Below, piece after piece: positions 13,594 through 32,406 of a stretch of DNA of 32,406 bases. The translations under genes were made by a program, and so were the position numbers. Source of the DNA: Octopus bimaculoides (taxonomy: Eukaryota); NCBI RefSeq assembly GCF_001194135.2, contig NC_068990.1:37906334-37938739 (forward strand), written 5' to 3'. The notes below the pieces were generated by a model. That model was given only the letters and a program-made list of their open reading frames with translations, was not told the origin of the DNA and searched no databases. The first letter of the stretch is position 1, and every line of letters starts with the position of its first letter.

Positions 13594-13638
<45 letters not shown>

Positions 13639-13697: not shown

Positions 13698-13758
<61 letters not shown>

Positions 13759-13884
13759 CATACATATTTATCGTATCCATACATACATATGTGTAAATAT
13801 AAGTCATTTTGGGTATCTATGTGTACCTGAGTGTGTATGACTGTGGTGGTTGTTTAAATGAAGAGGTGTAAATTTAATCCCCAG

Positions 13885-13933: not shown

Positions 13934-14280
13934 GTGAGTTTAACTTTGATATATTGTACTAATGCTCTTTCTTTATAAATAATTACAATGATTCTGCTGG
14001 AGTTTTTATTTATCTCTAAGTGTTTTAGTGTAGGTTTGGCTATGTTTAACACACACACATACACACACACGCACACACGTACACATACATCTCTACACAA
14101 TAATGTGAATAAAAGCAATATTAATCAAAAGAGATATCAATGATATTTGGAAACTGTCTCTCTCTGTGTATATATGTGTGTATATATATATTTATATATA
14201 TATCTATATATATATATATATATAAGTATGTATATACATACATACATATATATATATATGTATGTATATGCATATGCATA

Positions 14281-14371
<91 letters not shown>

Positions 14372-14531
14372 GCAGATGTATATGCACATATATATATTTG
14401 TATGTACAGATGCAGCAGTGTATGTACATGTGTTGGTATTAACCATCTTTTCTTTGCTGTGATTTAGTTTTCTAATCACATATGTCCCCAGTGATGCTAC
14501 TGTTCTTCAAGTACTCTTGAACTTGCTGTAG

Positions 14532-14587
14532 GGTGGAAGTCTCCAATGATATCATTGTTGAAGCATTAGAAATAAGTTTGTCAAAGA
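14532..14587 (+). CDS. Candidate internal coding exon (56 nt, phase 2-1): (W)VEVSNDIIVEALEISLSK
   Basis: Acceptor ctcttgaacttgctgtag|, weaker donor AGA|GTAACA, an open frame with protein-like composition, and phase-compatible with the preceding candidate exon. Confidence 0.3.
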
Positions 14588-14825
14588 GTAACAAAAATAC
14601 ATTTCTCATACTTTTCAAGAAGAGAGTACACATCTGTTTAATCCCTTGACTGTCTTGAAATAGAAGATAATTTTGCCTTAGATTACAACTTACTTTGTAA
14701 TAAAATATGAGATACACTGGTTTATATCTTTCTTGATATTTTAAGTATTAAAAAGAATGAGAAAATCATGGATAACATTTGAATATTGGTCAGTTGGTTT
14801 AGGATAGATTTTGAGTCAAAACAAA

Positions 14826-15684
14826 TACAAGGTTATATCAAAGAATTCCTATTTATTTACCTAAGTTCAACATTATCTCCTTCGAAATAGCCACCTTGTG
14901 CAGCAATACACTGGTCCCAGCATTCCTACCATTCATGGAATCCAGTCTGGAAGCTGTTTTCTGTGAGTTGAGAACCCTTTGTGGTTCGCTCTTAATCTTA
15001 ACAACAGTATTAAAATGGTGACCTTTGAGCTGCATTTTCATCTTGGGAATAGATGGAAGTCTGCAGGGGCTAAATCTGATGAATAGAATAGGTACTGAAG
15101 CAATACCATGTTGTTTTTGGTGAGAAACTCATGAGTGAGGAAGGTCGGTGACAGGGTGCATTGTTTTTGTGAAAATTCCAGAAGTTCAAATTGCCTGCAC
15201 AGACCAATAACATCAGCAATATCCTTGATTATCCTCTGATGAGAAGGATATAAATTTTCTCCATGTTTCCAGGGGTGATGCTCATAGCAGGTCTTCCAGA
15301 TCGTTCATCGAGTTCCAGGGATGTTGTTCCACTTTTGAAGTGCCCATGCCATTTGAAACATTGCATACAGCCCAGTGCCTCACCACTGTAAGCTCGCTAA
15401 AGCATACTTAATGTCCCTGTAGCAGACTTCCCAAATTTAATGCAAAATTACACATTGACGCTTGGTTCCAACTTTCCATTCATAATAAAAGTCATAGACT
15501 ACAACATAGACATGATCACAAAAGCAAAAATTTAAAAACTTGCAAAGTAATCACAGCACACTGTGTCACTCTGAACACTGCCTCTTGAAGGTCACTGCTA
15601 GCTTGCACTGTGCACACAACTGTGTACTGGCATTTGTTGATGTTCTACAGAACTAGCCTGAGAACTTTTTGATATCACCTTGTA
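14826..15684 (-). mobile_element. Internally deleted mariner (Tc1/mariner, D,D34D-type) element with both TIRs and TA target duplication
   Basis: TIRs TA|CAAGGTTATATCAAAGAATTC and TA|CAAGGTGATATCAAAAAGTTC (reverse complement of the right end). From ATG at 15483 the minus strand gives MNGKLEPSVNV*FCIKFGKSATGTLSML*RAYSGEALGCMQCFKWHGHFKSGTTSLELDERSGRP (mariner HTH region). It then jumps to NAPCHR..LTHEFLTKNNM..YSSDLAPADFHLF/KMKMQLKGHHF..QCIAAQGGYFEGDN (YSPDLAP motif and C-terminus). Stops and frameshifts are present. Confidence 0.92.
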
Positions 15685-15904
15685 ACGTCAAGACTAAAGT
15701 ATACAGTACAACCATCCATCACTCACAAGCGAATTAGGTATGGTAGCATGCATCATACTTTTAGGTTCCTCTGAGTCTTAAGTAAATATGCTCTGTTGGT
15801 CTTCCCACACTTTGACCAAATGGACCTTCAATAACTTGATAGCTGGGCAGGAAGAGGGATGTAAAAGCGTTGGGGTTAGCACTCATTTGCTGCAGAGTAT
15901 TTGG

Positions 15905-16030
15905 GAGGAGTGTGAAATGAAGTGTTTTGCTCATAGATACAACATATCATTCACTTCAGGAATTGAAACCATTAACTTAAGCTTGTGATTACAAGCCAAA
16001 CATCGTAACCACTAGGCTACATCGCTTCAC
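15905..16030 (-). mobile_element. tRNA-derived SINE family C, 5' head
   Basis: The reverse complement reads GTGAAGCGATGTAGCCTAGTGGTTACG...GGTTTCAATTCC...GTTGTATCTATGAGCAAAACACTTCATTTC, matching the + copy at 29907-30010. Confidence 0.7.
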
Positions 16031-16277
16031 ATCAAGGCAAGACTATATGGGTGCTTAAACTGAAAGAAATAGCAGACAAATTTTCATCAAGAATTGCCCT
16101 ACTGTCTCTGTGAAGAAAGGACACATTAAATAAGATAGTTATCAAAAGGAGTGTCAGTCATGGAGTGAGGAATAGAATATTTTGTCATGGGTGGATCGTC
16201 AATTGTGTAAACACTAATTACAAACAAACAATACAAGTTTAAATTTTCTTTGCAATTTAGTTAAAATAAAAATCACT

Positions 16278-16672
16278 GGTGCAAGTATGGCTGTGTGGTA
16301 AGAAGTTTGCTTTCCAACTACATGGTTCCAGGTTCATTCTCACCATATGGCACCTTCATCTAGTTTCTTCTACTATAGCATTCAGCTGACCAAAGCCTTG
16401 TGAGTGGATATGGTAGATGGAAACTGAAAGAAGCCCTTTATATCTCTGTATATCTATATGTGTGTGTCTTTGTGTTTGTCCCCCACCATGGCTTGAAAAC
16501 CGGTGTTGGTTTGTTTACATACCTGTAACTTATTGATTCAGCAAAGACACTGATGGAATAAATACCAGGTTTACAAAGCAAAAATAGATACTGGAGCTGA
16601 TGAGTTTGACTAAAATTCCTCAAGGTGATGCCCCAGCATGGCCATATTCTAATAACTGAAACAGGTTAAAAA
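16278..16672 (+). mobile_element. SINE family A, near full length
   Basis: GGTGCAAGTATGGCTGTGTGGTAAGAAG...CAGGTTCATTCTC...GTGAGTGGATATGGTAGATGGAAACTGAAAGAAGCCC...CCAGCATGGCC; collinear with 12817-13263. Confidence 0.9.
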
Positions 16673-16969
16673 ACGAAAAGGTGGAATATAAGTTCCAACT
16701 GAATGTAATGTATTCATAACTAGGTGGACTGGGTCATTAGCAGTTGAGGTGTCATTTGGTTGGTGGGTGGGTGGGGTCACAGAAATGTGGTGATGACATA
16801 TTATGAATGGACACCTCATTGGTAGGCAGTCAGCTAGTACGTCAGCACAATCAGAAATGGGATGCAACACACATGTATATATAAATAGACACATCATGCA
16901 TGTGCATACGCATATATGTATGCATATACAAATATTTATGCATATACATGAGTGTTTGCATAAATACAT

Positions 16970-17036
<67 letters not shown>

Positions 17037-17353
17037 TACATACATTATGTTATTGTATACATATAAATACACACTTTTATATCTGTGAACACATATGCAA
17101 TCATATATATATATGTATATCTATATAAATATGTATGTGTTTATATAGAGAATTATGTGAGTATATATACATACATACAGACACATACACACACATATAT
17201 ATATATAAAGGTATATATATACATATATATTTATATACATTTATGTATATATACATATATGTGTATATATGTATATATATAGATATATATATATATGTAC
17301 GTATATATATATGTGTGTGTATATATATATATGTTTGTTTGTTTGCTGTACAG

Positions 17354-17407
17354 TGATCTGTGGACATTTTGGATCCAGTCACACAAACTTTAAAGGATTA
17401 TTCAATC
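17354..17407 (+). CDS. Weak candidate symmetric exon (54 nt, phase 1-1): xICGHFGSSHTNFKGLFN
   Basis: Acceptor tttgtttgtttgctgtacag|, weak donor ATC|GTAATA. It is the only open frame in a non-repetitive island between microsatellites. Confidence 0.2.
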
Positions 17408-18410
17408 GTAATACATATATAAATGCAGATATAAATACCCCTAACAAACACCTTTTTATATGCATGTACAATCATATAATTTTTGTCTTACTACTGAATA
17501 TGTATGTACAAGTGAATGTGAACATATACATTCGTATATTTGTGGTGTGTATTTTGCTGGTAATTACTTTTGTGCATAATTGTATACATACATACATATA
17601 TACATGTATACACACACGTACATCTCTCTCTCTCCCTTTCTCTCTCTTAAACATATATTTATATGTACGTGTGCATATCTGTGTGTGTGTGTGTATATAT
17701 ACATACATATATATATATGTTTGTGTATGCATGTATATATACATGTGTCTGTATATATANNNNNNNNNNNNNNNNNNNNNNNNNNNNNNNNNNNNNNNNN
17801 NNNNNNNNNNNNNNNNNNNNNNNNNNNNNNNNNNNNNNNNNNNNNNNNNNNNNNNNNNNNNNNNNNNNNNNNNNNNNNNNNNNNNNNNNNNNNNNNNNNN
17901 NNNNNNNNNNNNNNNNNNNNNNNNNNNNNNNNNNNNNNNNNNNNNNNNNNNNNNNNNNNNNNNNNNNNNNNNNNNNNNNNNNNNNNNNNNNNNNNNNNNN
18001 NNNNNNNNNNNNNNNNNNNNNNNNNNNNNNNNNNNNNNNNNNNNNNNNNNNNNNNNNNNNNNNNNNNNNNNNNNATACATATATACTCATACATATATAC
18101 TCATACATATATATACATACGTATATATAAATATATATATATGTATATATATAAATATATATATATATGTATATGTGTATATATATACCTCTATATATAT
18201 ATACATATACATACATACATATACATACATACATACATACACACACACATATATATATATATATACACACATATACATACATACTTAGCAAGTATCAGTG
18301 AGTAAACATGTGTATGACAACAGCATTTATTTCCGCTCATTCCGAATGGTCATGTTGATTGGTTGCAGAGGTATAGATGATGGTCTGGTGTTGCTGTTAG
18401 TGGTGATGGT

Positions 18411-18441
<31 letters not shown>

Positions 18442-18880
18442 CTGCTGTCAGTTTGTTCTGTACAGGATCTCAGTCTTACCTCACCCATTTCTCCCTTGCT
18501 TCGCCATATGACATAGCCCCCCCTCCACACATTTTTTTTCTTCCCATCTCCACTCCTCAGCACGTTCTGTCCCATCATTCCATAATGTTATTGTCTAAAT
18601 ACATGATAGACCAAAAACAACATTGATAAGGCAATTATTTACTGCTGTATACAATTGGGTTTGCAGTATGGAACAAGTCCATGTAAAAACATTCTGTTAT
18701 AAAGCCTTTCCACCCACCTCCAAACACTACACACCTAATTATATGCATAATATTTGTATGTTTAGATGTATATATACACACATATATAAATATATGTACA
18801 TACATAACATATGCACACACACGCATGTATACATATGTGTGTGTATGTTGTTGTTATGGGTACATATATACATCCGTATG

Positions 18881-18929
<49 letters not shown>

Positions 18930-19580
18930 GTGCATGTGTATATATAGTTCATTTCTGGTAATCTGATTCCAAACAATGATATATTACTCTATTATATATA
19001 CTTTTCTCTATATCACAGCTAATATCCCTCCTTAATAATGCAATATGTAGCTTTGTTGTTCTACGTGTTATGTATTTCCCTGTATCTTCAAATATATATA
19101 TGTACACACATATAAGTATGTATGTATATATGAAGACATATGCACTTTTATATGTACTCATATGTACATGTATTTTATGAGGTGTGTGCATATTTTCTAT
19201 GCATATGTAGATGTGCAGAGTTATGTGTTTACATTTTTATATGCCACAAATTTGTGCGTGTATATCTGGAAAAATATATGAATTGGTTTTCATTTTTTTT
19301 TTTTGCATATATACCTATACATATTATATATATTATAATAAGAGATGTAATACATATTTTATGTACAGTTATTTACACAAACATATGCACACACATATAA
19401 AACATATATACATGATCATCTGCAGAAGCAGAAAATAAAATATGTATTACGTTGCTTAATGCATTATAGTTATCTTTATTCCTGATTATATTTTAGTATG
19501 TGCATGTGTACCCACACACACACACACTCACACAAACACATATATATACACCTGCGAACACACACATGCATATATATAAA

Positions 19581-19622
<42 letters not shown>

Positions 19623-19642
19623 CATATACATATGTATATATA

Positions 19643-19699
<57 letters not shown>

Positions 19700-20358
19700 A
19701 CTCACACACACACACAAAGTATATTTAGATTTTCCATGCTTATTTTGTCTGGTATTGTTCTATATCATGTTATGTTTTTTTGGTTTGTATATCTAGTAAA
19801 GGCTGAATTGCTGCTGTTCCAGTTGATGATGCCATTGGCATTGCCACACATTTTCACAATTTCACAATTTCTGTCATCTCCTCTTGTGATATTTTAACCC
19901 TTTGTAGTTATAATTGAGTGCTTTTGTTTAATTACTTCTTATCTACTTTCATATTTAAACCAACTTCTGTGTTTCGAATATTTCCTAATCATTAGCACAT
20001 TCTATTGCTACTTTTAACCTTGTGCCTGTACCTCCTGGTGTTTCTTCAGATGTGATTGTATGAAGCCACTAAACAACAAATCAATAATTTGCAAAAATAT
20101 GCCTACTCTTTAAGAATATTGTTTAAGAACAAATCTTACACACTATAATATAATGGTTAAAGGTTTGGATGGTGAAATACTCCAAAGGATTTTGTCAGGA
20201 AAAATATCACAAAAACTGTTAACTAAGAAAACAATATTTTCTAATAACAGCACTTTGAAAATGCATGCACCCACAGCAAACAATAGCAACAACACGTAGA
20301 GAAATGATAATCACCAAATCAACAACACAGCAATTATAATAATGATTGATACATAAGT

Positions 20359-20555
20359 TTAACCTTTTTGAGATGTTCTGTGTTTCTTTCAATTATTTTA
20401 AATATAATAAAGAATTTAGTAAAATGACTTAGTTATCATTCAGCTAGTGTTAGGAACATAAATTGTGACTTAAGTTTGGCAGAAGATTTTAATTCAAAAC
20501 TTATGAAAACAAAACATTTGTATTACAGAGCCAGAGCCGGTATCAAAAGTGTTAA
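20359..20555 (-). mobile_element. piggyBac-like MITE bounded by TTAA
   Basis: Begins TTAA-CCTTTT and ends AAAAGTG-TTAA (degenerate TTAA-CCC...GGG-TTAA ends). The ~197-bp body resembles a common octopus short repeat as recalled from memory, not checked. Confidence 0.55.
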
Positions 20556-20629
20556 GGCCAGCAGTTTGTGGGAGGGCTATCTAGGAGAGTATATAATCAA
20601 TCTGAGAAGGGGGAAAATATTGATATCAG

Positions 20630-20955
20630 CAAGATTTGAACTCAGATCATAATGTGCCAGTACGAATTGAACAAGACATTTTGTCAAACACTTTAATGAT
20701 TTTGCCAATTAACTGCTGTAAGAATCACAAAAGCAATGGTAACAACTGTGTTTAATTTAGGCATAAAGCCAGCAATTTTGAAGGGAAGGTGGTAGTTAAT
20801 GCCATAGACCTCAGTATTTGACTGGTATTTTATTGTATTGATGCCTGAAAGAATGAAAAGCATAGGCGACTTTGGCTGGTTTTGATCTTACAAGGTAAAA
20901 ATGTAGAACAACATGTTCTCTGTTCCTTCAATGATTCTTCCAATCTGTTGCCTTA
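20630..20955 (-). mobile_element. Two degenerate family-B SINE copies
   Basis: GATTTGAACTCAG...TTTTGCCA at 20630-20715 and AGGCATAAAGCCAGCAATTTTG...CTGAAAGAATGAAAAG...TTGCCTT at 20752-20955 align with 23833-24060. Confidence 0.6.
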
Positions 20956-21032
20956 AAGGCGACAAGAAGAAGAAGAAGAACAGCAGCTGCAGCAACGGTA
21001 GCAATGTCAACAACAAGGAAAAATAGCATCAA

Positions 21033-21330
21033 TACTTTACTCTTTTACTTGTTTCAGTCATTTGGCTGCGGCCATGCTGGAGCACCACCTTTAGTCGAGC
21101 AAATCGACCCAAGGACTTATTCTTTGGAAGCCTAGTACTTATTCTATCGGTCNNNNNNNNNNCTTATTCTTTGGAAGCCTAGTACTTATTCTATCGGTCT
21201 CTTTTACCAAACTGCTAAGTTACGGAGACGTAAACACACCAGCATTGGTTGTCAAGTGATGTTGGGGGGACAAACACAGTCAGACACACACACACATATA
21301 TATATATAAATACATATATAGGACGAGCTT
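21033..21330 (-). mobile_element. SINE family A, 3' half (CpG-rich, low-divergence copy)
   Basis: TACTCTTTTACTTGTTTCAGTCATTTGGCTGCGGCCATGCTGGAGCACCACCTTTAGTCGAGCAAATCGACC... is the reverse complement of the family A 3' end at 25430-25572. Confidence 0.9.
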
Positions 21331-21603
21331 AACAGTTTGGCAAAACTGACCAATTGAATAAGTATCATGTTTAAAAAATTAACTACTGGGGTGTCCCAGC
21401 ATGGCTTCAGTTCACTGACTGATACAAGTAAACCATAAAAGATAGGTGCAGGCGTGGCTGTGTGGTAAGAAGCTTGCTTCCCAACCACATGGTTCCAGGT
21501 TCAGTTCCACTGCATGACACTTTGGACAAGTATCTTCTTCTATAGTCTTCAGCCAACTAAAGCCTTGTGAGTGGATTTGGTAGACAGAAACTGAAAGAAG
21601 CCC
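21331..21603 (+). mobile_element. Old family-A 3' end (21331-21443) followed directly by a family-A 5' half (21445-21603)
   Basis: CAGTTTGGCAAAA...GAATAAGTA...CCCAGCATGGC...ACTGACTGATACAAGTAAA, then GGTGCAGGCGTGGCTGTGTGGTAAGAAGCTTGCTTCCCAACC...GAAACTGAAAGAAGCCC. Confidence 0.8.
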
Positions 21604-22334
21604 TCTCTTTCTCCCTCTACCACTCTCTCTCTTCCCTTTACACCGGCATGGTCACATGCTTCCGGTCAATAATCCTTTCCTTCCTTGGCTTTCGCCAAGT
21701 AACACACGCCACCACTTTGTCTCTCTCGGTTCCGTGCCTCATCGCGTTCATACACACATAATTTTTCTCGTCTGGCCGTAAAGCCTTCTGTTTGTTTTCC
21801 TGTCTTGTTTTTTGTCCGCCACTACATTCCTCCATGGCTAGANNNNNNNNNNNNNNNNNNNNNNNNNNNNNNNNNNNNNNNNNNNNNNNNNNNNNNNNNN
21901 NNNNNNNNNNNNNNNNNNNNNNNNNNNNNNNNNNNNNNNNNNNNNNNNNNNNNNNNNNNNNNNNNNNNNNNNNNNNNNNNNNNNNNNNNNNNNNNNNNNN
22001 NNNNNNNNNNNNNNNNNNNNNNNNNNNNNNNNNNNNNNNNNNNNNNNNNNNNNNNNNNNNNNNNNNNNNNNNNNNNNNNNNNNNNNNNNNNNNNNNNNNN
22101 NNNNNNNNNNNNNNNNNNNNNNNNNNNNNNNNNNNNNNNNNNNNNNNNNNNNNNNNNNNNNNNNNNNNNNNNNNNNNNNNNNNNNNNNNNNNNNNNNNNN
22201 NNNNNNNNNNNNNNNNNNNNNNNNNNNNNNNNNNNNNNNNNNNNNNNNNNNNNNNNNNNNNNNNNNNNNNNNNNNNNNNNNNNNNNNNNNNNNNNNNNNN
22301 NNNNNNNNNNNNNNNNNNNNNNNNNNNNNNNNNN

Positions 22335-22382
<48 letters not shown>

Positions 22383-22560
22383 GTAATAAAATATGATAGT
22401 GAAAGAGATAGGTATAACCTGAATAAGAGAGAAAAGGGAAGAAATAGAAATAGAGATAAAGAGAAAAAGTGTTGGAAATGAAATGAAATGAAATGGTGGG
22501 AGGGATATTAATAACTTGAAAGAGAAAGAGAGAGAGAGAGAGAGAGGAGGAGGAGGAGGA
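22335..22560. repeat. (AG)n and purine-rich simple repeats
   Basis: Direct reading: (AG)n at 22335-22379 and 22527-22546, (GGA)n at 22546-22561, (GAAAT)n at ~22476-22495. Confidence 0.95.
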
Positions 22561-22839
22561 GGGAATAAATTATAGTGAAAGTTAATAATATGTAATGGAA
22601 GTTGGGAGGTAGTTACTTGAATGAGAAGTTAATGTTAGAAAAAGAGACAGAAAGAGTTAAGAAAGAAAGAGGAAGTGAGGATGGAAATGAAATTTTGGTA
22701 AAGTGGGGGTGGTGATGTGGGCTAGGTATGAAAACCACCTATTTACGAAATAGTGTTCTCTCTTCCTATCATTGTATTTTATAGGAAATTACATTCCAAG
22801 AATAACAACAAAGTAACATTAAAAAAAGTAAATAAATAT

Positions 22840-23224
22840 TGGCCCAACCCCCTCCTCTCGCCCTTACCTATTTACTCACCTCTCACTACCACTTCATCTC
22901 ATTACCAATAACTTCCTCCTCCTCCTTTTTCTTCTTCTTCTTCTTCTTCTTCTTCTTCTTCTTCTTCTTCTACCTCCTCCTTCTCCTCCTGTGGATTTCC
23001 CCTTCTTCCTCTCATGATACCAAGCAATATCCCAACTCCTTCTCCAGTCATCTCTCACTCTTCCTCTCACTTTCCTTCTCACTCTCTCTCTCTCATCATT
23101 GCTGTCATCATATTCTTACATTGAATGATGCAAAACCACTACCACCATCACCAATACTACAACCACTGTCACCACCACCACCACTGCAATCATTAACTCC
23201 TTTACCACCACTTTACTACTAATG

Positions 23225-23268
<44 letters not shown>

Positions 23269-23830
23269 GCTGCTGCTACTTTCATTATTAACACCATTAC
23301 CACACTACGACGACCACCACCACCCCCTATTATCACCATTACCACTCCTATCATGAGCACTACTGCTACCACTACCACTACCACAAACATCACCACCGAC
23401 ATCACAAACTGCCACGCAAAACATTAACCCCCCACCACCATCACCGCTACAATCATCAGCATCACAACCACTACTTCCAAGACACTTACCAACATCACCA
23501 CCACCACCATGATCATAACCATTGCCACAACCAATAACACTGTACTCAACCACATTGCCGTGACGCCAACTGCCACCATCACTATCACCTGTGCCAGTGC
23601 CATAACCACTACAAGCATCACCTTCATCAGCATCATCTTCACTGTCATCCTCATCATCGTTGCTACTACAACCATTCTGTTAGACATCAACTCCATAACT
23701 ACCACTATTAACACCACAACCATTACGACGATGACGACAGCGAACAACAACAAAAACAACTAAAAAAACAACTGCGTCAACAACAATATCACAACAGGCA
23801 ACATCCCACAACCACCAAGACTTATGCCAC
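22840..23830. repeat. Low-complexity trinucleotide mosaic: (TTC)n, (CTA)n, (CCA/CAT/CAA)-rich
   Basis: (TTC)n at ~22930-22970, (CTA)n at ~23225-23268, and degenerate ACC/ATC/ACA triplets throughout. These account for the stop-free ORFs called on both strands. Confidence 0.9.
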
Positions 23831-23832
23831 AA

Positions 23833-24060
23833 CTGTTTCTTTCTTGCCCACAGGGGGCTAAACATTGAGGGGACAAACAAGGACAGACAAAGAGATTAAG
23901 TTGATTACATCGACCCAGAGAGTAAGTGGTACTTATTTAATCAACCTTGAAAGGATTAAAAGCAAGGTCAACCTCGGAGGAATTTGAACTCAGAATGTAA
24001 CAGCAGACAAAATACCACTAAGTATTTCGCCCGGCGTGCTAACGATTCTGCCAGCTCGCT
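23833..24060 (-). mobile_element. SINE family B, full length, relatively young
   Basis: The reverse complement starts GCGAGCTGGCAGAATCGTTAGCACGCCGGGCGAAATACTTAG...GAGTTCAAATTCCTCCGAGGTTGACC (A/B boxes, CpGs retained) and ends ...TTTAGCCCCCTGTGGGCAAGAAAGAAA. Confidence 0.9.
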
Positions 24061-25138
24061 AAATAACAACCTTTATAACTGTGAAACCATCACCAGCATA
24101 GGTACTGCATGACTGCCACAACTATTGTACCACTTCTCCAAGAATCACTAGAGGACCATCATTCATACAACCACCAGCACCAATAGTAGTAGCACCACCA
24201 TCGCCACCACCACCACCACTACCATCACCACCGCCACCACCACTATCACCAAAGTCTTTTGCACCTGTCATGTTTAGGTAGTTTATTCATAATTAAATTA
24301 TCGCTTATATTTCATATAGATAGAACTTCATGAAGAAAATTTTGGAGGCCACCAAAGTGGACACTGCTAATAGGATGACATATTTGCTATATACTTCAAG
24401 GCACTCATTGGTCTTCAATATCATTATCAATGATATTTTCATTGATAGTTATCTTCCCAGACGTTGTGATTCACCAGCTGAGTGTAGCAACAAGGACCAT
24501 GAAGTACAAGCATCCCAAGTCTTAAGACAACTGGTGTTACTGGTAAATCATCGAAGGACCTTATCAAAATGATTACAACAGTAGTTGAAATGATGGGTAG
24601 ACTATTCTCTACATAATGGCTGTAAAAGTAAATTGGTTTGGCCATTGTAGCAAAGCCTTGTTTGCTAGTGCCACTGAGACAGAAACAATAAAGACACAAT
24701 ATTGCCCAAAAACGTTTTAAATTTACTAAAAAGCATGTTATGATATTTTTTACTCATCGGAATCTTGACACACCTTTTGAACAAACAGTGGCACATTAGT
24801 TTGATTCTGAACATACTTTACATGTAGAGTTAAAAATTACTATCACACTTCTCATCCCATGGGAATCTGATAATTACTGTTGTGTCATATGTGAGAAGTT
24901 TTTAAAACGTTATGTTTTAAAGTTAGTTTAGCAATAATAAATCCTTAATATATTTTTCAACTTGTTTAATAAATAATATTTCGGTATTTTACAATTAGGA
25001 ATAAATTATTTTTTTAAATGTTCAGTCATTAGTATAAAGTTTCCAAAAGCCTTAAAATATGTTACCCACTTTAACATTTCATTCAATTATGTTGTTCTAA
25101 AGAATTTTTCATACATATCCCAAGTAACAATAATTATC

Positions 25139-25331
25139 ATGCAGGAGTGGCTGTGTGCTAAGAAGCTTGCTTCCCAACCACACGGTTCCAGGTTCAGTCC
25201 CACTGCATGACACCACACCTTGGGCAAGTGTTTTCTACTATGGCCTCGTGCCAACCAAAGCCTTGCGAGTGGATTTGGAAGATGGAAACAAAAGAAGCTC
25301 ATCGTATATATACACACACACACATATATAT

Positions 25332-25367
<36 letters not shown>

Positions 25368-25572
25368 TTGTGTGTCTGTGTTTGTCCCCCCACCATCATT
25401 TGACAACCGATGCTGGTGTGTTTACATCACTGTAACTTAGCAGTTCAGCAAAAGAGACCACTAGAATAAGTACTAGACTTACAAAGAATAAGTCCTGGGG
25501 ACGATTTGTTCGACTAATGGTGATGCTCCAGCATGGCTGCAGTCAAATGACTGAAACAAGTAAAAGAATAAA
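25139..25572 (+). mobile_element. SINE family A, full length
   Basis: GCAGGAGTGGCTGTGTGCTAAGAAGCTTGCTTCCCAACCACACGGTTCCAGGTTCAGTCCC ... CTCCAGCATGGCTGCAGTCAAATGACTGAAACAAGTAAAAGAATAAAA. Confidence 0.92.
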
Positions 25573-26083
25573 AATCTGTTAATGATCCTTTTATCACTGC
25601 TTCAATAAATATGGTCAGACACATGCTTCCCTAATGCCGTCAAATAATACAGTAATGTGACCAGAATTGTCTCTCACAATTCTCAAAGTAATAGAAACTA
25701 GTGGAATAACCAGACTCATATTGTTTTCAATTATCATGTAATCATTTCAAATTAGCTTTACAATGTTTTATGAACTAAATATCTTAACCTTAATTTACCT
25801 ATCTTCTTGTCTATATTTCTGCCACACCACTTTTACTTTTTGTTAGCTTTTTACTTCACCTTGCATTAAATACGTAATGAAACCTGTTGATCTTTTAGAT
25901 CACTTTTGTTATAAGGGTTGCTTTGACTAACCACATTTTGTGGAACTAATTTTTCTATAAAAGTACATGGGAATCTAGTTTCTCTTTCCTATTTGGCTTC
26001 ATTCACTCAACCTGTTTCTCACTTTATTTTGGCAATAATCATGCTAGGTCTAATTTTGCTTTCACTTTCCACATAACTAATAG

Positions 26084-26124
26084 TTAAATTCTGCTTTGGC
26101 ACAGCCTTGACAGAATTTCTGCAA
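26084..26124 (+). CDS. Candidate coding exon (41 nt, phase 1-0): xKFCFGTALTEFLQ
   Basis: Pyrimidine tract ttttgctttcactttcc, then actaatag| acceptor and consensus donor CAA|GTAAGT, with a single open frame. Confidence 0.35.
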
Positions 26125-26356
26125 GTAAGTGTGTACATGCTTGTTTAACTAAGATTTTTAATGACTTCTATTTACAATTCACTCATTTAAATTTATAATA
26201 CAAATTATTGAATTGATATTAAAACAGGAAAACATTTACATAATTTTCCTTTAACATTTCGATTGTATAAATTATATAAGTCACTTATTGGATGTACATT
26301 TTCATGAATACATCATGTAAAATTTTGCAAATTAATATCTTGAAATCTATATTTAT

Positions 26357-26436
26357 CTTGTATTCTGAAGTCATGCATTACAGAAATTCTGTTGTACTTG
26401 TATTCTGAAGCCATATATTACAGAAATTCTGTTATA
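26357..26436. repeat. 40-bp tandem duplication (2 copies, 36/40 identical)
   Basis: CTTGTATTCTGAAGTCATGCATTACAGAAATTCTGTTGTA followed by CTTGTATTCTGAAGCCATATATTACAGAAATTCTGTTATA. Confidence 0.9.
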
Positions 26437-26998
26437 TTATAATAATAGCAAGAACCACTAAGAACTATTTTCTCTGTTGGTAAATAGGAAAATAAGGAAA
26501 ATTATATACAAAAATTTTTATTGTTATATTTAAAGCTGAACCTTTTAAAATTGTTTATAAATAAATTAAAATTAACAGTACTGCAGTATTGCAGTGCAAT
26601 CAAATATGCCTACTACACACACATATATATTATAGGCTGACTGAAATTAATATAATCACTGTTGCCATTCATGTTCTTTCAAATATTTTGAAGTTATCTC
26701 CCTTGCATTTTGAGCAAGAAATATTGAAGTTAATTGCTTTTCTCTTCATTATGGTCGTACTTTCAATTGATTAAATATTTTGGGGGTTCACTAGATTAAG
26801 TGTGCGAACAGCTGTTTTAGTCTTGGTCAAGACATTAAACTGCATTAAAATGGGCTAAGAAGTCAGGAGTTTTGGGGAGTTTTGGGTTCTCTGATTAGTA
26901 GATAAGTGGGCCCTGCGCCTCAAAGGCAAACACTGGAAAGTAAAAGACTAGTGGAATAGCCAGAAAATAAACAAGCAGAAAACATCGTAAGAATTCAG

Positions 26999-27052
26999 GA
27001 TCTGGCATGGATATATGTGATTACCAGTGCCAATATATTCTGTCATTCTAAA
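26999..27052 (+). CDS. Candidate penultimate exon (54 nt, phase 0-0): DLAWIYVITSANIFCHSK
   Basis: Donor AAA|GTATGT opens a 121-nt intron that ends in a very strong acceptor. The exon's own acceptor (gtaagaattcag|) is weak. Confidence 0.25.
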
Positions 27053-27173
27053 GTATGTATGTGTAAACCTAAGTTTTACTGAATCAGATCAAAATGTAGC
27101 TCAGCAAATTGCAGATTTATCTCCCTTGCCTTTTTGGTATTGTCACTGATTTTTCTTTCCCTTTCCATTACAG

Positions 27174-27179
27174 GTGTAA
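27174..27179 (+). CDS. Candidate terminal coding segment (V-stop) followed by putative 3' UTR
   Basis: Branch-like CTGAT at 27146-27150 and acceptor tttttctttccctttccattacag|GTG TAA. All three frames stop within 13 codons, as expected for a last exon. Confidence 0.3.
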   Translation: M

Positions 27180-28949
27180 TTTCAATTGCTTAAACATTTC
27201 TAGGGGTATTTGAGAACCAATTCAAGTTTATGTTAGTGATACTGTGTTGTACTTTTTACACTGTTGCATAATGTAACCATTTTCTGGCCAGTCTACTCCT
27301 CAAAATCAGAATTGAGGTTTTAATCCTTAAATCCCAAACAGTAATAACTTTTGGGACATCCTTTTTGCCTTTATCCTGCAATACATATCCTGAATGAAGA
27401 ATCTATTTCGAAACTGTAGCTGAAACTGATATTTCATATTTAATATTAAGTTATATATTTTATTTATGCTTTATGCATGTAAACTGAACTATCTGTTTTT
27501 GGTAAATGTAATATTCTCATAATGGTATGGCATTTTTGCAGTGTCAGTTGGATTTATAGCAGTGTTCATGACCAGATAGGCAAACCATAAAAATACTGAT
27601 TCTAAAAAAACATCATAAAGGGGGAAAAAAGAAGTCTATTTATTGACAGTCTTTTTCCTGTCACTCATATTCTGTAGATAGAATAATTTTCTTCATGTTT
27701 TGGTTCTAAATTTTGTAGTTTTATTGCAACTTGAAGGCTATTTTACCAAAATATATATTTGTCCACTTTTGTAACTTTTGCGTTTCCATTCATCTCTGTC
27801 AGCACATATTTTAATGCACATAAAATGCCACTAAAAAACACCATGTAAAAAAAATTCTAATCAAATATTTGAAAGATTCTAATCAAATCTTTCAAGTTCC
27901 ATTTTATTCTTCCTTGTTAATCTGTTATTCTGTTTTTGTTAATTCAAATGACTTCTGTAGTCAAAGAAATGAATAGTTGTTTAGTCACAGGACAACTTTG
28001 CTTGAGCAAATCTATTATCAAATACTTTCCTACCATGAACATCCCCATCATTTTCATATTATAGGAATACATTGTCCAGTGTGTTGTTTCTTTAAAAGGT
28101 ATGATACAATTTGAAGGACAGGATATTTGGCTGCTATTCTTAGTAGATCATGTAACTGAGTAAATACAATCACTTGCAGACAAATGCAGGGTTTCTTCTA
28201 GTTTGCCATTTATACAGAATGATCATTTCTCTTCAGAACAAACCACAGAATGCCACTAGTGTTTGCTATTCATTGGTACTTGAATTTCAGAAAAAAAAAC
28301 CCCTTCCATTGGCACTTCAAACACTGAACACTTTACAAGTAAACAGAATATATATAGTGACGCTTCTGTGAAAAATAATAGTCAAATTACTTTTAAATCT
28401 TCCTGTAACATTTAAAAACAGGAAAATAGCTTAGACATCATCTATGTGTTCATACTCCAGTTTTCATATATAATAATTATGTAGCAGGTATTCTATTTAA
28501 AGAAGTAAAAGATCATATGACCACAATTTTTAACACTGAGTCTACCTTCAAACAACTGACTTATGATCAAAAACGCCCTAGCTGTGAGCACTATGTCTCT
28601 TGTTTTCAGATACAATATATAAAGGACTACATTATTAAGTTTATTTTATCTTGTGTAAGATATAGTTTGTAATAAGATATAATATGATGAATATTTGCAT
28701 GTTGTTTCTAGCAGATAAGCAACCACTTAAAACTTCCATCTTTAGCTTAAAACTCCATGTGGTTGGTGATCTTTGTGTCAAGATTTTATCATCTGCTTTC
28801 GTGAGGCTTACATTGTCTGGAACACATATTAGAGCATCAGATGAAAAGTGTTGTATTTGTTCCAGAGTTTTACTTTCCAAGTTCAAATGCTACCTTATAT
28901 CAACTTTAATTTTCATACTTCTAGGGTTGGCAAGGTAAACAAATATAAA

Positions 28950-29045
28950 GCAGTGGATTTGCTGAATCATTAGAGCATTGACCAAAACGGTATGTAGTAT
29001 TTGTTCTGGCTCTTTATGTTCTAGATTCAAATTCTTCTATGACAT
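28950..29045 (+). mobile_element. Degenerate family-B SINE head
   Basis: GCAGTGGATTTGCTGAATCATTAGAGCATTG...GTTCTAGATTCAAATTC aligns with the family B 5' end. Confidence 0.55.
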
Positions 29046-29829
29046 TGGTGCCAAACTACATCAGCCCTTAACATTTCCTTGGATAACATCAATGACATAG
29101 AGAGTAGGGATACCTGAAACATGTGCAACTGCTGGTAATAATAAATAAAAAAACATGCCAAGATTTTTGTACATGAGAGGACCATTTCAGATGCATACAT
29201 ATATTATGGCCCAACCTACTGGAAATAGTATTCCCCCTACTGGAAATAGTATTCAATCTAAATCTCATTCATGTTTTATTATACTGTCTTAGGAAATGTA
29301 GAACATGTAGAATAATGTTGTATCTGATGGGAAAGCAAAAATGTTAGTGTATTTTCTGGTATACAAGTTGAATTTCTAAGACTAAAACTTAATAGCAAAA
29401 AGATAAGTTGACTAATACATTGAAATGACTTTGAAGGGCCAAAAATTCTATGTAAAATGCTGCAGGATTTGAAAAGATAATGACAATGTTTGATTATGTT
29501 TACATTTTATACTTCATCATTTTGTATGCTTGGAAATGTGGTAACAAAAGGTTTGTTTGATAAGAGCTGCACCAGCTATAATATTAATGCATTAACAAAA
29601 ATATCAGTACAATAACTGTAAAACCAGTGCATCAATGCTAATGTCAGTACAACAATAAGTGCAGTAACAGCAACTATAAGAGGAGTCACAGAATAATTTT
29701 TCTCATTGTGATTCCTGTAACATATTATTTATGAATTGTCCTTATACTGTTCAATGTCTTTCAAGAACAATTCCTAATTATACAAACAATCCTAGATTTC
29801 CAAACTCATACTGCAAAAATGATTGCTTC

Positions 29830-30360
29830 TAATTCCAGTACAAGGCCAGCAACTTTCAGGGGATGGATTTGTCACTTGCATCGACCCCCATCCTCTATTA
29901 TTACACTGCTGAATGTCTAGTGGTTAGGGGATTGCATTCATGATTTCAAGGTATTGGTTTCGACTCTTGGATCAGGTGGTATGTTGCGTTCTTGAGCAAA
30001 ACACTAAATTTTATATTGCTTTATGATCAGTTTGACAGCTGATGTGTGACACACTGTGCAATACTATAGAGAATGTTAAATAAACATAGGGAGTGAGCTG
30101 ATGTACAATACAAACATTTGACCAATATAAGTAAATAATCTGTGCAGATTGTCCAGCAAAAAATTTGTAGAACCCTCATCGGTCATTTATGACAGGAGAG
30201 TACACAAAGTATTACACAAGTGCTTTCCTTTTATCCAATCCAAAAGAATGAATGAATGAGTTGACGACTACTAGATTTCAACTCAGATTGTAAAGATTCA
30301 CAAGAGCCAGAAAACCTGTTTTCTTTTTTGCCATAAGTCTTCTGATTCAATTGATTCATT
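29830..30360. mobile_element. Family-C SINE (+, ~29907-30209) nested inside an old family-B SINE (-, 29830-29890 and 30220-30360)
   Basis: The family B reverse-complement pieces CAAGGCCAGCAACTTTCAGGGG...CATCGACCCC and ...AGATTTCAACTCAG are interrupted by CTAGTGGTTAGGG...GGTTTCGACTC...GTTCTTGAGCAAAACAC. The direct repeat TATTACAC occurs at 29899-29906 and 30210-30217. Confidence 0.6.
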
Positions 30361-31384
30361 AACCTGGTACTTGCAGAAATAAAAGAAGTACACAGTATTG
30401 ACTAGGAATATAAATAATTAAGCAACTCAAATATCTGATAATAATGTCAATTCACTATTCTGTGTGGTATCTTGATGATTGTTTTCTAAATTTCTTGTAA
30501 TTTGGATTAGAACTTTCTTCTGATATAATTTTATCATTTATATTTATGACATTTATAATATGTATCATTAAATTCCCTAAGTATATATATATAGTAATAA
30601 TATTAGGGAATAAAGATTTATTCCAACCTTACAGGCAAAAATCGGGATAATATTACACCGCGTTTTGTAATATATAATATATATGTATATAACTAATTTA
30701 GAGACGAACCACCATTCTACAATTCAGTCAACTCAGAACCCGTCCAAATCCATGCTGAGAGGCATATACCATATTAATATTTATCTAAGATTTTAATCTA
30801 AAATTTTTAAATTTTAAATTTAAATAATATATCATAAATATATCATATAAAGAAACACTCATCATAAAAATATTAATTAAAAAATTTTTTTAATATTTTT
30901 TAAAATTTAAAAATCAAAATTATAATTTGGACAGTAAAAATCAATACAATAATATATAGTATGAAAGTATAAATGTATAAAAGTCAGTGCTAGTACATAG
31001 ATTATGCGCGTTTCATGGCTGAAATAGGACTATATAAAATCATAAGCAAATTCTATCCAAGTTCATTAGAACGGGGAAATGATTTTACACCCAAAATCAG
31101 TTACTCTTCTGGTGAAATCCCTAAGAAAATACTTAAATCATTCAAGGAATAAACATAAACATGAGAAATAAAGATATATATATAGAGACAAAATCTGTAA
31201 ACTAATCCCTACATTAACGATATTAATATAGTTATTAAGAGTTGCAATCTAAAAATATTATAGTAAACAAGGTTAAAACATTGAGGAATAAGTAGATAAT
31301 AGAAATAATGTGTTAGTGTACAAAGTTACTAACAGACGTATGTCAATATTGTTTAGAAAATTAAAATAAGAAAACATGACTTAC

Positions 31385-31440
31385 CTGCCGGCTGTTAACT
31401 GTAAATAAACCAAAATGGCCGTGCTATAGAATTTATACTA
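31385..31440 (-). other. Candidate non-coding first exon of a leftward gene (5' end uncertain)
   Basis: The minus strand reads ...ATAGCACGGCCATTTTGGTTTATTTACAGTTAACAGCCGGCAG|GTAAGTC, a perfect donor preceded by a CGGCCATTTT motif typical of 5' UTRs. It lies inside the CpG-retaining region. Confidence 0.4.
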
Positions 31441-31885
31441 AAAGGTCTCGTGATAGATATGGCGTCTATTACCCAGAAGTACATGCGTATTATAATTACT
31501 AAAATAATAACGAAAATATCGAAAAAGAAAATCTACCTAAAATAAAAAGTTTCTTGAGGATTAAAAATGCTAAAATACTTAAACTCGCAAATTAACGCAG
31601 AATAATAACTATACCACATACGAATATTCTATATAACGTAAATAATGTTAAGAAAACTTTGCAAAAGACCGCTCATATTATCGTTGAATACTTTATAGTC
31701 AAAGGTTAAATCATTATGGAAGAAGTAAAAAAAAATAGTAAAAAAATGTGTTAGTGTAATGAGTTAACAAAAGACGCATGTCAATATTGTTAAGAAAATT
31801 AACATTAGAAAATATAACTTATTTGCCGGCAATTTACCGGAGATAAACTAAACAGGGAGTACCTTAGAATTCTCACGTAATAAAC

Positions 31886-31904
31886 ATGGCGTCTATTACA
31901 AGAG
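31886..31904 (+). CDS. Candidate first coding exon of a rightward gene: MASITR + phase-1 intron
   Basis: AAAC ATG GCG TCT ATT ACA AGA G|GTAAAT has a strong Kozak-like context (A at -3, G at +4) and a good donor, and lies in the CpG-retaining region. The rest of the gene would lie beyond the window. Confidence 0.4.
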
Positions 31905-32262
31905 GTAAATACGTATTATAATTACTAAAATAATAACGAAAACATCGAAAAAGAAAATCTACCTAAAATAAAAAGTTTAGTGAAGATTAATAATATTAAA
32001 ATACTTAAAACTCTCTGATTTACGCAGAATAATAACTATACCACATACGAATATTATATATTACTTAAATAATACTATGAAATATTGTAAAAGACTGCTC
32101 ATATTATCGTTGAATACTTAAAGTAAAGGTAGTTATACGTTCTAATTTTGTATAATATTGTGATGATTAAAGCGTATTCTAAAGCTAATTAGATGTATTT
32201 CACGCTACTGATCATAACTATAAGTTGGTACCTAATCTTATGCCTAGATAGATAAATAAGTT

Positions 32263-32406
32263 GGCGCATGAGTGGCTGTGTGGTAAGTAGCTTGCTTACC
32301 AACCATATGGTTCCGGGTTCATTCCCACTGGGTGGCACCTTGTGAGTGGATTTGGTAGACGGAAACTGAAAGAATCCCGTCATATATATATATATATATA
32401 TATATA
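32263..32406 (+). mobile_element. SINE family A 5' half with internal deletion, running into (AT)n at the window edge
   Basis: GGCGCATGAGTGGCTGTGTGGTAAGTAGCTTGCTTACCAACCATATGGTTCCGGGTTCATTCCC...GGCACCTTG|TGAGTGGATTTGGTAGACGGAAACTGAAAG. It lacks the ~44-bp segment present in the other copies. Confidence 0.9.

What the first reader, a model, noticed from the sequence alone, without database searches (positions are those of the whole stretch)
31307..32129. Duplicated bidirectional promoter with apparently reciprocal loss: left copy serves a leftward gene, right copy a rightward gene
Seen in sequence: two collinear ~400-bp copies 438 bp apart. Copy 1 has a perfect minus-strand donor (CAG|GTAAGT, 31385/31384), while the homologous site in copy 2 is dead (CAA|ATAAGT, 31817-31825). 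Copy 2 has a plus-strand AAAC-ATG GCG TCT ATT ACA AGA G|GTAAAT start exon. The copy-1 homologue has a 1-nt insertion, a weaker start context and a degraded donor (AGAT-ATGGCGTCTATTACCCAGAA|GTACAT). Inference: an ancestral head-to-head promoter with under 100 bp between the two starts was tandemly duplicated, and each copy kept only the outward-facing function. That would be duplication-degeneration acting on a cis-regulatory module, uncoupling two previously co-regulated genes. Caveat: copy 2 has a possible substitute minus donor CCG|GTAAAT at 31832-31840.
Basis: partly seen in the sequence, partly recalled or inferred. Interest (0 to 1): 0.7.

Follow-up and report, generated by a model that had tools for sequence, protein, structure and literature searches.

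The report
Duplicated CpG-rich promoter-like segment
A roughly 435-base segment really is duplicated in tandem, and it sits in a small patch that has kept its CpG sites beside 30 kb that has lost them, so it is probably the start of a leftward gene, but the proposed 'two-way promoter that split its two jobs between the copies' is not shown by the sequence.

Summary
There are only two copies in the window.

New evidence: the whole window left of about 30.6 kb is strongly CpG-depleted (o/e 0.28, with TpG/CpA excess). The duplicated unit has o/e 1.65, with 25 CpGs against 4-6 expected. A SINE copy right of the unit keeps 4 of 4 diagnostic CpGs, while four SINE copies of the same age to the left keep 0 of 16. 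So the unit lies in long-term unmethylated DNA abutting gene-body-like methylated DNA.

The minus-strand donor CAG|GTAAGT at 31385 is the best-scoring of 3621 GT sites in the window. It points into the depleted domain and has no good acceptor upstream, which looks like a first exon.

The plus-strand 'start exon' of copy 2 is at chance level: about 8 comparable ATG-plus-donor loci occur in 30 kb, and its donor ranks 41st.

Best reading (confidence about 0.45): a tandemly duplicated promoter and first-exon region of one leftward gene, with copy 2 a decayed or alternative upstream duplicate. Bidirectionality and reciprocal loss remain untested, because no transcripts, outgroup or right-hand flank were available. 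The finding is ordinary in kind and of modest interest.

The parts
31262..31701 (.). Copy 1 of the tandem duplication (about 440 nt)
   Evidence: 14 CpGs, o/e 1.63.
31702..32135 (.). Copy 2 of the tandem duplication (about 434 nt)
   Evidence: 11 CpGs, o/e 1.65.
31379..31387 (-). Consensus splice donor CAG|GTAAGT, last exon base 31385. Proposed end of a non-coding first exon of a leftward transcript.
   Evidence: It is the only perfect 9-mer in the window and ranks 1 of 3621 GT sites by PWM. No acceptor ranked better than 174 of 3000 lies in the unit. All three minus-strand frames upstream of it hit stop codons (read).
31817..31825 (-). Copy-2 homologue of that donor, inactivated to CAA|ATAAGT by two adjacent changes
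31832..31840 (-). Weaker possible substitute donor CCG|GTAAAT in copy 2
   Evidence: PWM 7.55, rank 53
31412..31437 (-). Copy-1-only minus-strand motifs upstream of the donor: the TATAAA-like box at 31437..31432 and GCCATTTT (initiator/YY1-like) at 31419..31412. Both are absent from copy 2.
   Evidence: Read. Copy 2 lacks 31435-31445 (an 11-nt indel) and has CTAAACAGGGAG in place of CCAAAATGGCCG. These are motif matches only, and weak evidence in AT-rich DNA.
31886..31910 (+). Copy-2 plus-strand ATG mini-ORF (MASITR, then G|) followed by GTAAAT.
   Evidence: The coordinates are verified. The donor has PWM 7.77, rank 41. The pattern recurs at about 8 loci per 30 kb.
31459..31484 (+). Copy-1 homologue of that mini-ORF, with a 1-nt insertion and the poor donor GAA|GTACAT
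   Evidence: PWM 1.49, rank 1229.
31475..31697 (.). Better-conserved half of the unit (88.7% identity against 77.8% for 31269-31474). It is A-rich on the plus strand and has exact blocks of 31-35 nt.
   Evidence: No stable RNA fold on either strand (z +1.05 and +1.48). No Rfam match at gathering score.
30601..32406 (.). CpG-preserved domain. The maximum-likelihood change point is near 30.6 kb, the peak is on the duplicated unit, and the domain runs to the window end.
   Evidence: o/e is 0.18 (29.3-30.3 kb), 0.60 (30.3-31.3 kb), 1.63, 1.65 and 0.83 (right flank).
1..30600 (.). CpG-depleted, TpG/CpA-enriched domain, inferred to be germline-methylated gene-body or intron DNA
   Evidence: Every 1-kb bin has o/e 0.0-0.53 and TpG+CpA o/e is mostly 1.2-1.8.
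32263..32385 (+). SINE copy just right of the unit that has kept its CpGs. It serves as an internal control for the methylation boundary.

Best explanation
About 435 nt of promoter-proximal DNA of a single leftward (minus-strand) gene was duplicated in tandem long ago. The unit lies at the core of a patch of at least 1.8 kb that has stayed free of germline CpG methylation. That patch adjoins at least 30 kb that carries the mutational scar of methylation, which in molluscs marks the bodies of expressed genes.

In this model, transcription starts in copy 1, somewhere between about 31400 and 31500. It produces a short non-coding first exon that ends at the consensus donor at 31385, and it splices into a very long first intron running leftward. 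Copy 2 is an upstream duplicate of the same promoter and first-exon module. It has lost the donor, the TATA-like box and the initiator-like GCCATTTT. It therefore survives either as extra upstream regulatory DNA or as a weak alternative first exon using CCG|GTAAAT at 31838.

Shown here: the duplication, the motifs, the CpG contrast and the SINE control. Inferred: the methylation state, the position of the transcription start site (TSS), the existence of the gene, and the direction of change between the copies.
For: Duplication.

CpG contrast: o/e is 1.65 in the unit against 0.28 elsewhere, with 25 CpGs observed against 4.2-6.1 expected (p 1e-8 to 1e-12). Each copy is significant on its own. 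Since the duplication, CpGs have not been hypermutable: 10 of 14 are retained, against 67% retention for all dinucleotides.

SINE control: non-CpG divergence is equal across copies (8.6% against 8.9-12.3%). The copy at 32.3 kb keeps 4 of 4 diagnostic ancestral CpGs. The four copies at 12.8-25.3 kb keep 0 of 16 and show mixed TG/CA outcomes.

Splice signals: the minus-strand donor at 31385 ranks 1 of 3621. It is oriented into the depleted domain and has no strong acceptor upstream.

Literature: in Octopus bimaculoides, methylated CpGs cluster in the bodies of highly expressed genes, and a class of 8972 genes is methylated in the body but not at the TSS or promoter (PMC9476566).
Against: - No transcript data were available, and no exon of the supposed gene was found anywhere in the window.
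- The CpG change point is graded and sits about 0.8 kb left of the donor. The coincidence of the best donor lying inside the island with the right orientation is therefore only about a 3% event (my estimate), not a decisive one.
- The TATA-like and initiator-like motifs are poorly spaced (-21 or -37) and are common in 27% GC DNA.
- A methylated-to-unmethylated transition can also mark the 3' end of a rightward gene.
- Octopus transposable elements are also CpG-dense and unmethylated (PMC9476566).
- The species itself was not verified with tools.
Confidence: 0.45

Rival explanations
1. Neutral tandem duplication. An ordinary slippage or unequal-crossover duplication occurred in unmethylated DNA that happens to flank one end (5' or 3') of a methylated gene. 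The donor, the ATG and the other motifs are coincidences in AT-rich sequence and none is used.
For: - No coding potential in any frame.
- The plus-strand start-exon pattern is at chance level.
- Acceptors are unremarkable.
- The right flank and a SINE there are also CpG-preserved, so the unmethylated state belongs to the position, not specifically to the unit.
- The window holds many other small tandem duplications.
Against: - The single best donor of the window lies inside this 1.8-kb patch and points into the depleted domain.
- The unit's CpG o/e of 1.65 exceeds that of its own flanks, 0.60 and 0.83.
- Divergence is significantly uneven, 77.8% against 88.7% identity. That suggests constraint or gene conversion on part of the unit.
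Confidence: 0.3
2. An ancestral head-to-head promoter serving a leftward and a rightward gene was duplicated. Copy 1 kept only the leftward first exon and copy 2 kept only the rightward start exon (duplication-degeneration-complementation on a regulatory module).
For: - The motif pattern is exactly as described.
- The promoter-like CpG signature covers both copies.
- The copy-1 plus-strand homologue has a frameshift and a very poor donor, rank 1229 against rank 41 for copy 2.
- ATGGCGTCTATTAC is kept intact in both copies.
Against: - The rightward start exon is statistically unremarkable.
- It encodes only 6 codons, and the rest of the gene would lie outside the window.
- There is no fall in CpG in the 500 nt to the right.
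- Without an outgroup, loss cannot be told from gain.
- The proposed shared core (31382-31456) is the most diverged part of the unit.
- Copy 2 still has a usable minus-strand donor at 31838.
- A one-gene model explains all the differences.
Confidence: 0.09
3. The unit is part of a mobile element or satellite whose own structure includes tandem monomers, for example the 5' promoter monomers of a LINE-like element or the subterminal repeats of a DNA transposon. On this view its CpG richness reflects the usual CpG density of octopus transposable elements.
For: - Octopus transposable elements are reported as CpG-dense with low methylation (PMC9476566).
- The tandem monomers have an older internal sub-repeat (78% over 51 nt).
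- The window is full of repeats.
Against: - There is no other copy in 32 kb, although the SINE has five.
- No terminal inverted repeats, LTR-like structure or ORF were found.
- The two public metagenome scans found no matches.
- A SINE of ordinary age next to the unit also keeps its CpGs, so youth is not needed to explain the CpG richness.
- Genome-wide copy number could not be tested.
Confidence: 0.12
4. Assembly artefact: two haplotypes, or a collapsed repeat, were laid down in tandem.
For: The window is a draft scaffold with 9 N runs.
Against: The copies differ by 11-22% and by several indels, which is far above allelic divergence. No gap separates them.
Confidence: 0.02

Closest known systems
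Unmethylated, CpG-preserved promoter at the 5' end of a gene-body-methylated invertebrate gene (class 'MP2' of Macchi et al. 2022, O. bimaculoides)
   Same: There is a marked (graded over about 1 kb) change from CpG-depleted to CpG-preserved DNA. A consensus donor points into the depleted side, and the preserved patch spans about 2 kb.
   Different: Methylation and the transcription start site are inferred from sequence only. The patch is 26% GC, so it is an island by observed/expected ratio and not by G+C content. It contains an internal tandem duplication.
Tandemly duplicated promoter and first-exon modules that give alternative first exons (as in clustered protocadherin or UGT1A variable exons; from general knowledge)
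   Same: The repeated unit contains a promoter-like region plus an exon end with a donor, all in the same orientation upstream of a long intron.
   Different: There are only two copies, the exon would be non-coding, and one copy has lost its consensus donor. No evidence shows that either copy is spliced.
Bidirectional (head-to-head) promoters of animal genes (from general knowledge)
   Same: Outward-facing donor-like sites lie less than 100 nt apart within a unit, the region is CpG-preserved, and GCCAT/ATGGCG (YY1-type) motifs are present.
   Different: Neither gene has been demonstrated. The rightward signal is at chance level and its gene would lie outside the window.
Duplication-degeneration-complementation (Force et al. 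1999; from general knowledge)
   Same: The two duplicates show complementary differences in two candidate sub-functions.
   Different: The model is defined for duplicated genes with demonstrable ancestral sub-functions. Here there is no ancestor, no function assay and only one robust sub-function.

Membership tests
Tandem segmental duplication | Two adjacent collinear copies, with no gap and significant similarity | tested here: met
   nhmmer E-values are 5e-142 and 2e-135, the period is 426-438 nt, and no N run lies between the copies.
CpG-island-type / unmethylated promoter | Local CpG observed/expected ratio far above the surrounding DNA | tested here: met
   o/e 1.65 against 0.28. CpGs are not hypermutable between the copies. 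The SINE control gives 4/4 against 0/16.
CpG-island-type / unmethylated promoter | Elevated G+C content (classical vertebrate criterion) | tested here: not met
   GC is 0.25-0.28, below the window mean of 0.32.
CpG-island-type / unmethylated promoter | A mapped transcription start site, or absence of methylation measured directly | not testable with these tools
First exon of a spliced transcript (minus strand) | A strong donor with no acceptor upstream, oriented into an intron | tested here: met
   The donor ranks 1 of 3621. The best acceptor in the unit ranks 174 of 3000.
First exon of a spliced transcript (minus strand) | Downstream exons or coding sequence of the same gene | tested here: inconclusive
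   No hits were found, but those concatenated queries missed a fragment that a single query detected. ORFs near the unit are not in the protein collection.
Bidirectional promoter | Two genes on opposite strands with start sites less than 1 kb apart | not testable with these tools
   The right-hand gene would lie beyond base 32406, and the left-hand gene is inferred only.
Bidirectional promoter | A rightward start exon better than chance | tested here: not met
   The donor ranks 41, and about 8 comparable ATG-plus-donor loci occur in 30 kb.
Duplication-degeneration-complementation | A single-copy ancestor carrying both functions | not testable with these tools
   No orthologous cephalopod locus could be retrieved, and both metagenome scans were empty.
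Duplication-degeneration-complementation | Complementary loss in the two copies | tested here: inconclusive
   The sequence pattern is present. Its polarity is unknown, copy 2 keeps a rank-53 minus-strand donor, and the plus-strand function is unproven.
Transposable element or satellite family | Multiple dispersed or arrayed copies | tested here: not met
   Only two copies occur in 32 kb. Genome-wide copy number is not testable here.
Transposable element or satellite family | Terminal repeats, an ORF or other element hallmarks | tested here: not met
   No relevant inverted repeats, and no ORF longer than 47 codons under either genetic code.
Structured non-coding RNA gene | A match to a known family, or unusually stable folding | tested here: not met
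   Rfam gave nothing at gathering score and only E>3 noise otherwise. No tRNA was found. Folding z-scores are +1.05 and +1.48.
Mitochondrial insert (NUMT) | Open reading frames under the invertebrate mitochondrial code | tested here: not met
   The longest open stretch is 47 codons. An origin from mitochondrial rRNA or control region could not be tested.

The most novel reading that the evidence does not exclude
A head-to-head promoter pair was duplicated in tandem and each copy kept only its outward-facing first exon. Two once co-regulated genes would then have been physically uncoupled by subfunctionalisation of a regulatory module rather than of a gene.
Probability: 0.08. Interest if true: 0.6.

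Novelty: new member of a known kind. Interest (0 to 1): 0.3.

Why it matters
If the leftward-gene reading is right, this is an ordinary example of a promoter and first-exon duplication. Its main use is for annotation: it marks the probable 5' end of a gene whose first intron exceeds 30 kb.

The more useful by-product is methodological. In this genome a marked CpG observed/expected change, checked with same-age SINE copies on either side, locates the edge of a long-term methylated gene body from sequence alone. That can flag likely promoters in AT-rich cephalopod DNA, where G+C-based island criteria fail.

Only if the bidirectional reciprocal-loss model were confirmed would this become a notable case of regulatory subfunctionalisation. 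A full-text search for that combination found only two loosely related papers.

Tried and rejected
1. Concatenated stop-to-stop ORFs were used as single protein queries. These covered 24.3-31.5 kb on both strands and 0.15-22.9 kb on the minus strand. Neither gave a hit. However, the second query contained an RT-like fragment that gave four hits when searched alone. The concatenation trick is therefore insensitive, and these negatives say nothing about exons.
3. An exact look-up of ten window ORFs, four of them in or beside the unit, found none in the protein collection. The genomic contig could therefore not be extended beyond the window.
4. A look-up of the best RT hit gave only a 966-nt Logan contig with no organism information.
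5. Two exact-block scans of the metagenome collection returned nothing.
6. Rfam, tRNA and RNA-folding tests were all negative. I rejected a structured RNA as the reason the 3' half is better conserved.
7. Reading the minus-strand stretch 31498-31385 as an internal coding exon was rejected. All three frames hit stops and its acceptor scores poorly.
8. A mitochondrial protein-coding insert was rejected.
9. Pfam on the candidate transposase and RT fragments found nothing significant.
10. The bacterial promoter/terminator scanner was not used, because it does not apply to animal DNA.
Full report
**1. The observation**

The region 31262-32135 consists of two directly adjacent, collinear copies of a unit about 435 nt long.
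- The repeat finder recovers five blocks in register, with start-to-start spacing of 426-438 nt.
- A MAFFT alignment of the two copies has 89% mean column identity. Gapped blastn gives 80.5% over 431 nt.
- A profile built from both copies finds only these two places in the window.
- No run of N lies between them. The nine N runs of this draft scaffold are all elsewhere.
- Divergence of 11-22% plus several indels excludes two alleles laid in tandem.

- The minus-strand CAG|GTAAGT has its last exon base at 31385.
- Its dead homologue CAA|ATAAGT lies at 31825..31817.
- The plus-strand AAAC-ATG...AGA G|GTAAAT has its ATG at 31886 and its junction at 31904.
- The frameshifted homologue with GTACAT has its ATG at 31459.
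- The possible substitute donor CCG|GTAAAT lies at 31840..31832.

**2. How much of this exceeds chance**

The perfect 9-mer CAGGTAAGT occurs once in 32 kb on either strand, against about 0.09 expected per strand. I scored all 3621 GT dinucleotides on both strands with a generic donor weight matrix. The matrix frequencies come from general knowledge of the MAG|GTRAGT consensus. The 9-mer at 31385 is the top-scoring site.

The rightward donor GAG|GTAAAT ranks 41st and the substitute minus-strand donor ranks 53rd. I also counted a composite pattern across the window: a purine at -3, ATGG, an open frame, and a donor at least as good within 200 nt. It occurs at about eight independent loci. An 870-nt segment would therefore contain one by chance roughly one time in five.

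The leftward signal is thus exceptional. The rightward signal is not.

**3. New evidence: the unit is a CpG island by ratio inside a CpG desert**

The window as a whole has a CpG observed/expected ratio of 0.30. Every 1-kb bin from 1 to 30000 lies between 0.0 and 0.53, and most of them show an excess of TpG+CpA (1.2-1.8). That is the mutational signature of methylated CpG decay.

The two copies have o/e 1.63 and 1.65 at only 25-28% G+C. They hold 25 CpGs where 4.2-6.1 are expected from the rest of the window (p 1e-8 to 1e-12). Each copy is significant on its own.

The transition is graded. The o/e is 0.18 at 29.3-30.3 kb, 0.60 at 30.3-31.3 kb, 1.63 and 1.65 on the two copies, and 0.83 in the last 271 nt. 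A single change-point fit places the boundary near 30.6 kb.

Between the two copies, CpGs have been retained as well as any other dinucleotide: 10 of 14, against 67% overall. Only two of the five copy-specific CpG differences involve TG in the other copy. CpGs here have therefore not been hypermutable since the duplication.

**4. An internal control**

The window carries five copies of one SINE, all on the plus strand. Their divergence from the majority sequence at non-CpG positions is the same: 8.6% for the copy at 32263-32385 and 8.9-12.3% for the four copies between 12.8 and 25.3 kb. They are therefore of similar age.

Four alignment columns have CG in at least one copy and TG or CA (CT at one site in two copies) in the rest; three of the four show a TG/CA mixture, which marks them as ancestral CpGs. 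At these columns the right-hand copy keeps CG at 4 of 4, and the four left-hand copies keep 0 of 16. My own Fisher exact calculation gives about 2e-4.

The difference in CpG fate is therefore a property of position, not of the age or origin of the sequence. It has persisted for as long as these SINEs have been there.

**5. What that means**

In Octopus bimaculoides fewer than 10% of CpGs are methylated. The methylated ones cluster in the bodies of a subset of highly and broadly expressed genes. One large class of 8972 genes is methylated through the body but unmethylated at the transcription start site and promoter. Intergenic DNA and transposable elements are largely unmethylated (PMC9476566).

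From the 80.66 million CpG positions counted on both strands in that paper, and a genome of about 2-2.4 Gb at about 36% G+C (the size and composition are from my own memory), the genome-wide o/e is roughly 0.6. On that estimate the left 30 kb is more depleted than average and the unit is far less depleted.

I did not verify the species with tools. The inference needs only mosaic, gene-body-type methylation, which is general in molluscs.

The simplest reading is that bases 1-30600 are part of the body of an expressed, methylated gene, most likely one very long intron. The last 1.8 kb then lies outside the methylated part, at one end of that gene.

**6. Which end, and which strand**

Three observations favour the 5' end of a minus-strand gene.
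- The best donor in the window lies inside the CpG-preserved patch and points into the depleted domain. By my estimate this has about a 3% chance, given a 1.8-kb patch in 30 kb and two orientations.
- No acceptor of any quality lies upstream of it on the minus strand within the unit. The best ranks 174 of 3000. A first exon has that arrangement and an internal exon does not.
- All three minus-strand frames between 31498 and 31385 contain stops. The exon would be non-coding, which is acceptable for a 5' leader but not for an internal coding exon.

In addition, the cited paper describes methylation persisting downstream of the transcript end in the relevant gene class. That makes a clear boundary somewhat more typical of 5' ends.

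On the minus strand, copy 1 also carries a TATAAA-like box (31437..31432) and GCCATTTT (31419..31412). The latter resembles the YY1/initiator element; this comparison is from memory and was not tested. Their spacing to plausible start sites is imperfect, and such motifs are cheap in 27% G+C DNA, so I give them little weight.

**7. The two copies compared**

Identity is 77.8% over 31269-31474 and 88.7% over 31475-31697. That is 43 differences in 194 aligned positions against 25 in 222, which my own Fisher calculation puts at about 0.004.

The least conserved stretch is 31382-31456. This is exactly the interval between the two proposed outward-facing exons, and identity there is 27-34 of 50 positions. 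Within it, copy 2 differs from copy 1 in three ways:
- the two-base change that kills the donor;
- an 11-nt indel (31435-31445) that removes the TATA-like box;
- replacement of CCAAAATGGCCG by CTAAACAGGGAG.

All three candidate minus-strand core elements are therefore present in copy 1 and absent from copy 2. This fits a redundant upstream duplicate that has decayed, or gain in copy 1; no outgroup is available to decide.

The better-conserved half may be constrained upstream regulatory sequence or may have been homogenised by gene conversion. It is not a structured RNA, given z-scores of +1.05 and +1.48 and no Rfam match at gathering score.

Loss of constraint should bring a sequence up to the neutral rate, not above that of its neighbours.

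**8. The rightward gene**

Nothing testable supports it.
- The mini-ORF is six codons long.
- Its donor is ordinary, and the composite pattern is common.
- Any further exon lies beyond base 32406.
- CpG content does not fall in the 500 nt to its right. This is neutral evidence, since most octopus genes are unmethylated.
- The conserved ATGGCGTCTATTAC block occurs only in these two copies. It is equally well read as GACGCCAT on the minus strand, a promoter motif about 45-70 nt upstream of the leftward start.

**9. Other possibilities**

- A repeat-family origin cannot be excluded without the whole genome. In its disfavour, there is no third copy in 32 kb, no terminal repeat and no ORF, and the CpG preservation does not need a young insertion.
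- A mitochondrial protein-coding insert is excluded.
- An assembly artefact is very unlikely, given the divergence between the copies.

**10. What could not be done**

- No cephalopod genome, transcriptome or methylome is reachable with these tools.
- Exact-ORF look-ups failed, and both metagenome scans were empty.
- My two concatenated protein searches turned out to be insensitive. A later single-fragment search found hits that the concatenated query had missed. The absence of detected exons is therefore not evidence of absence.

**11. Verdict**

My confidence in each reading is:

| Reading | Confidence |
|---|---|
| Tandem duplication of the promoter and first-exon region of one leftward gene, upstream copy decayed | about 0.45 |
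| Neutral duplication in unmethylated flank DNA | about 0.30 |
| Mobile-element or satellite monomers | about 0.12 |
| Assembly artefact | about 0.02 |

In kind this is a new member of a known class, and its interest is modest (0.3).

Noticed in passing
window 1-30600 versus 30601-32406: The window splits into a long CpG-depleted, TpG/CpA-enriched domain (o/e 0.0-0.53 in every kb) and a short CpG-preserved domain at the right end. This suggests the window is mostly one methylated gene body or intron.
   Followed up: yes
window 12817-12971, 16288-16443, 21445-21603, 25141-25296, 32263-32385 (all + strand): Five copies of one SINE with similar non-CpG divergence. The last copy has an internal deletion of about 40 nt and alone keeps the ancestral CpGs (4/4 against 0/16).
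   Followed up: yes
window 14856-15400, minus strand: Three overlapping open stretches look like a decayed mariner-type transposase (motif ...YSSDLAPADFHLFPR). The only PDB matches are Mos1 transposase residues 263-289, at a weak E of 0.35, and Pfam finds nothing.
   Followed up: partly
window 151-375, minus strand: A 75-codon open stretch resembles the C-terminal tail of retrotransposon reverse-transcriptase proteins. It has four homologues (E 5e-13 to 2e-7), all on very short Logan or ENA contigs without names.
   Followed up: partly
window 23000-24300: The most G+C-rich part of the window (0.43) has extreme C over G skew (-0.56) and (CTT)n, (TAC)n and (CAC)n arrays. Its long open frames are low-complexity and probably not coding.
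   Followed up: no
window 3146-3415 and 3790-3996: Other local tandem duplications: a 137-nt unit x2 at 93% identity and a 20/80-nt array. Small tandem duplications are common in this window.
   Followed up: no
window 22418 and 22880, minus strand: The top-scoring acceptor (22418) and the second-best donor (22880) of the window both lie on the minus strand, in a purine/pyrimidine-skewed low-complexity stretch beside an N run. This is probably a compositional artefact, but it would be worth checking against transcripts of a leftward gene.
   Followed up: no
window 1568-1762, 7059-7402, 8527-9341, 17760-18074, 21843-22334 and four shorter runs: Nine N runs totalling 2250 bases, mostly flanked by (TA)n or (CA)n microsatellites. 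The source is a gapped draft scaffold, so distances across these points are estimates.
   Followed up: no
method note: Joining many ORF translations into one long query for the word-indexed protein search lost a fragment that scores E 5e-13 when searched alone. Negatives from such concatenated queries should not be trusted.
   Followed up: yes
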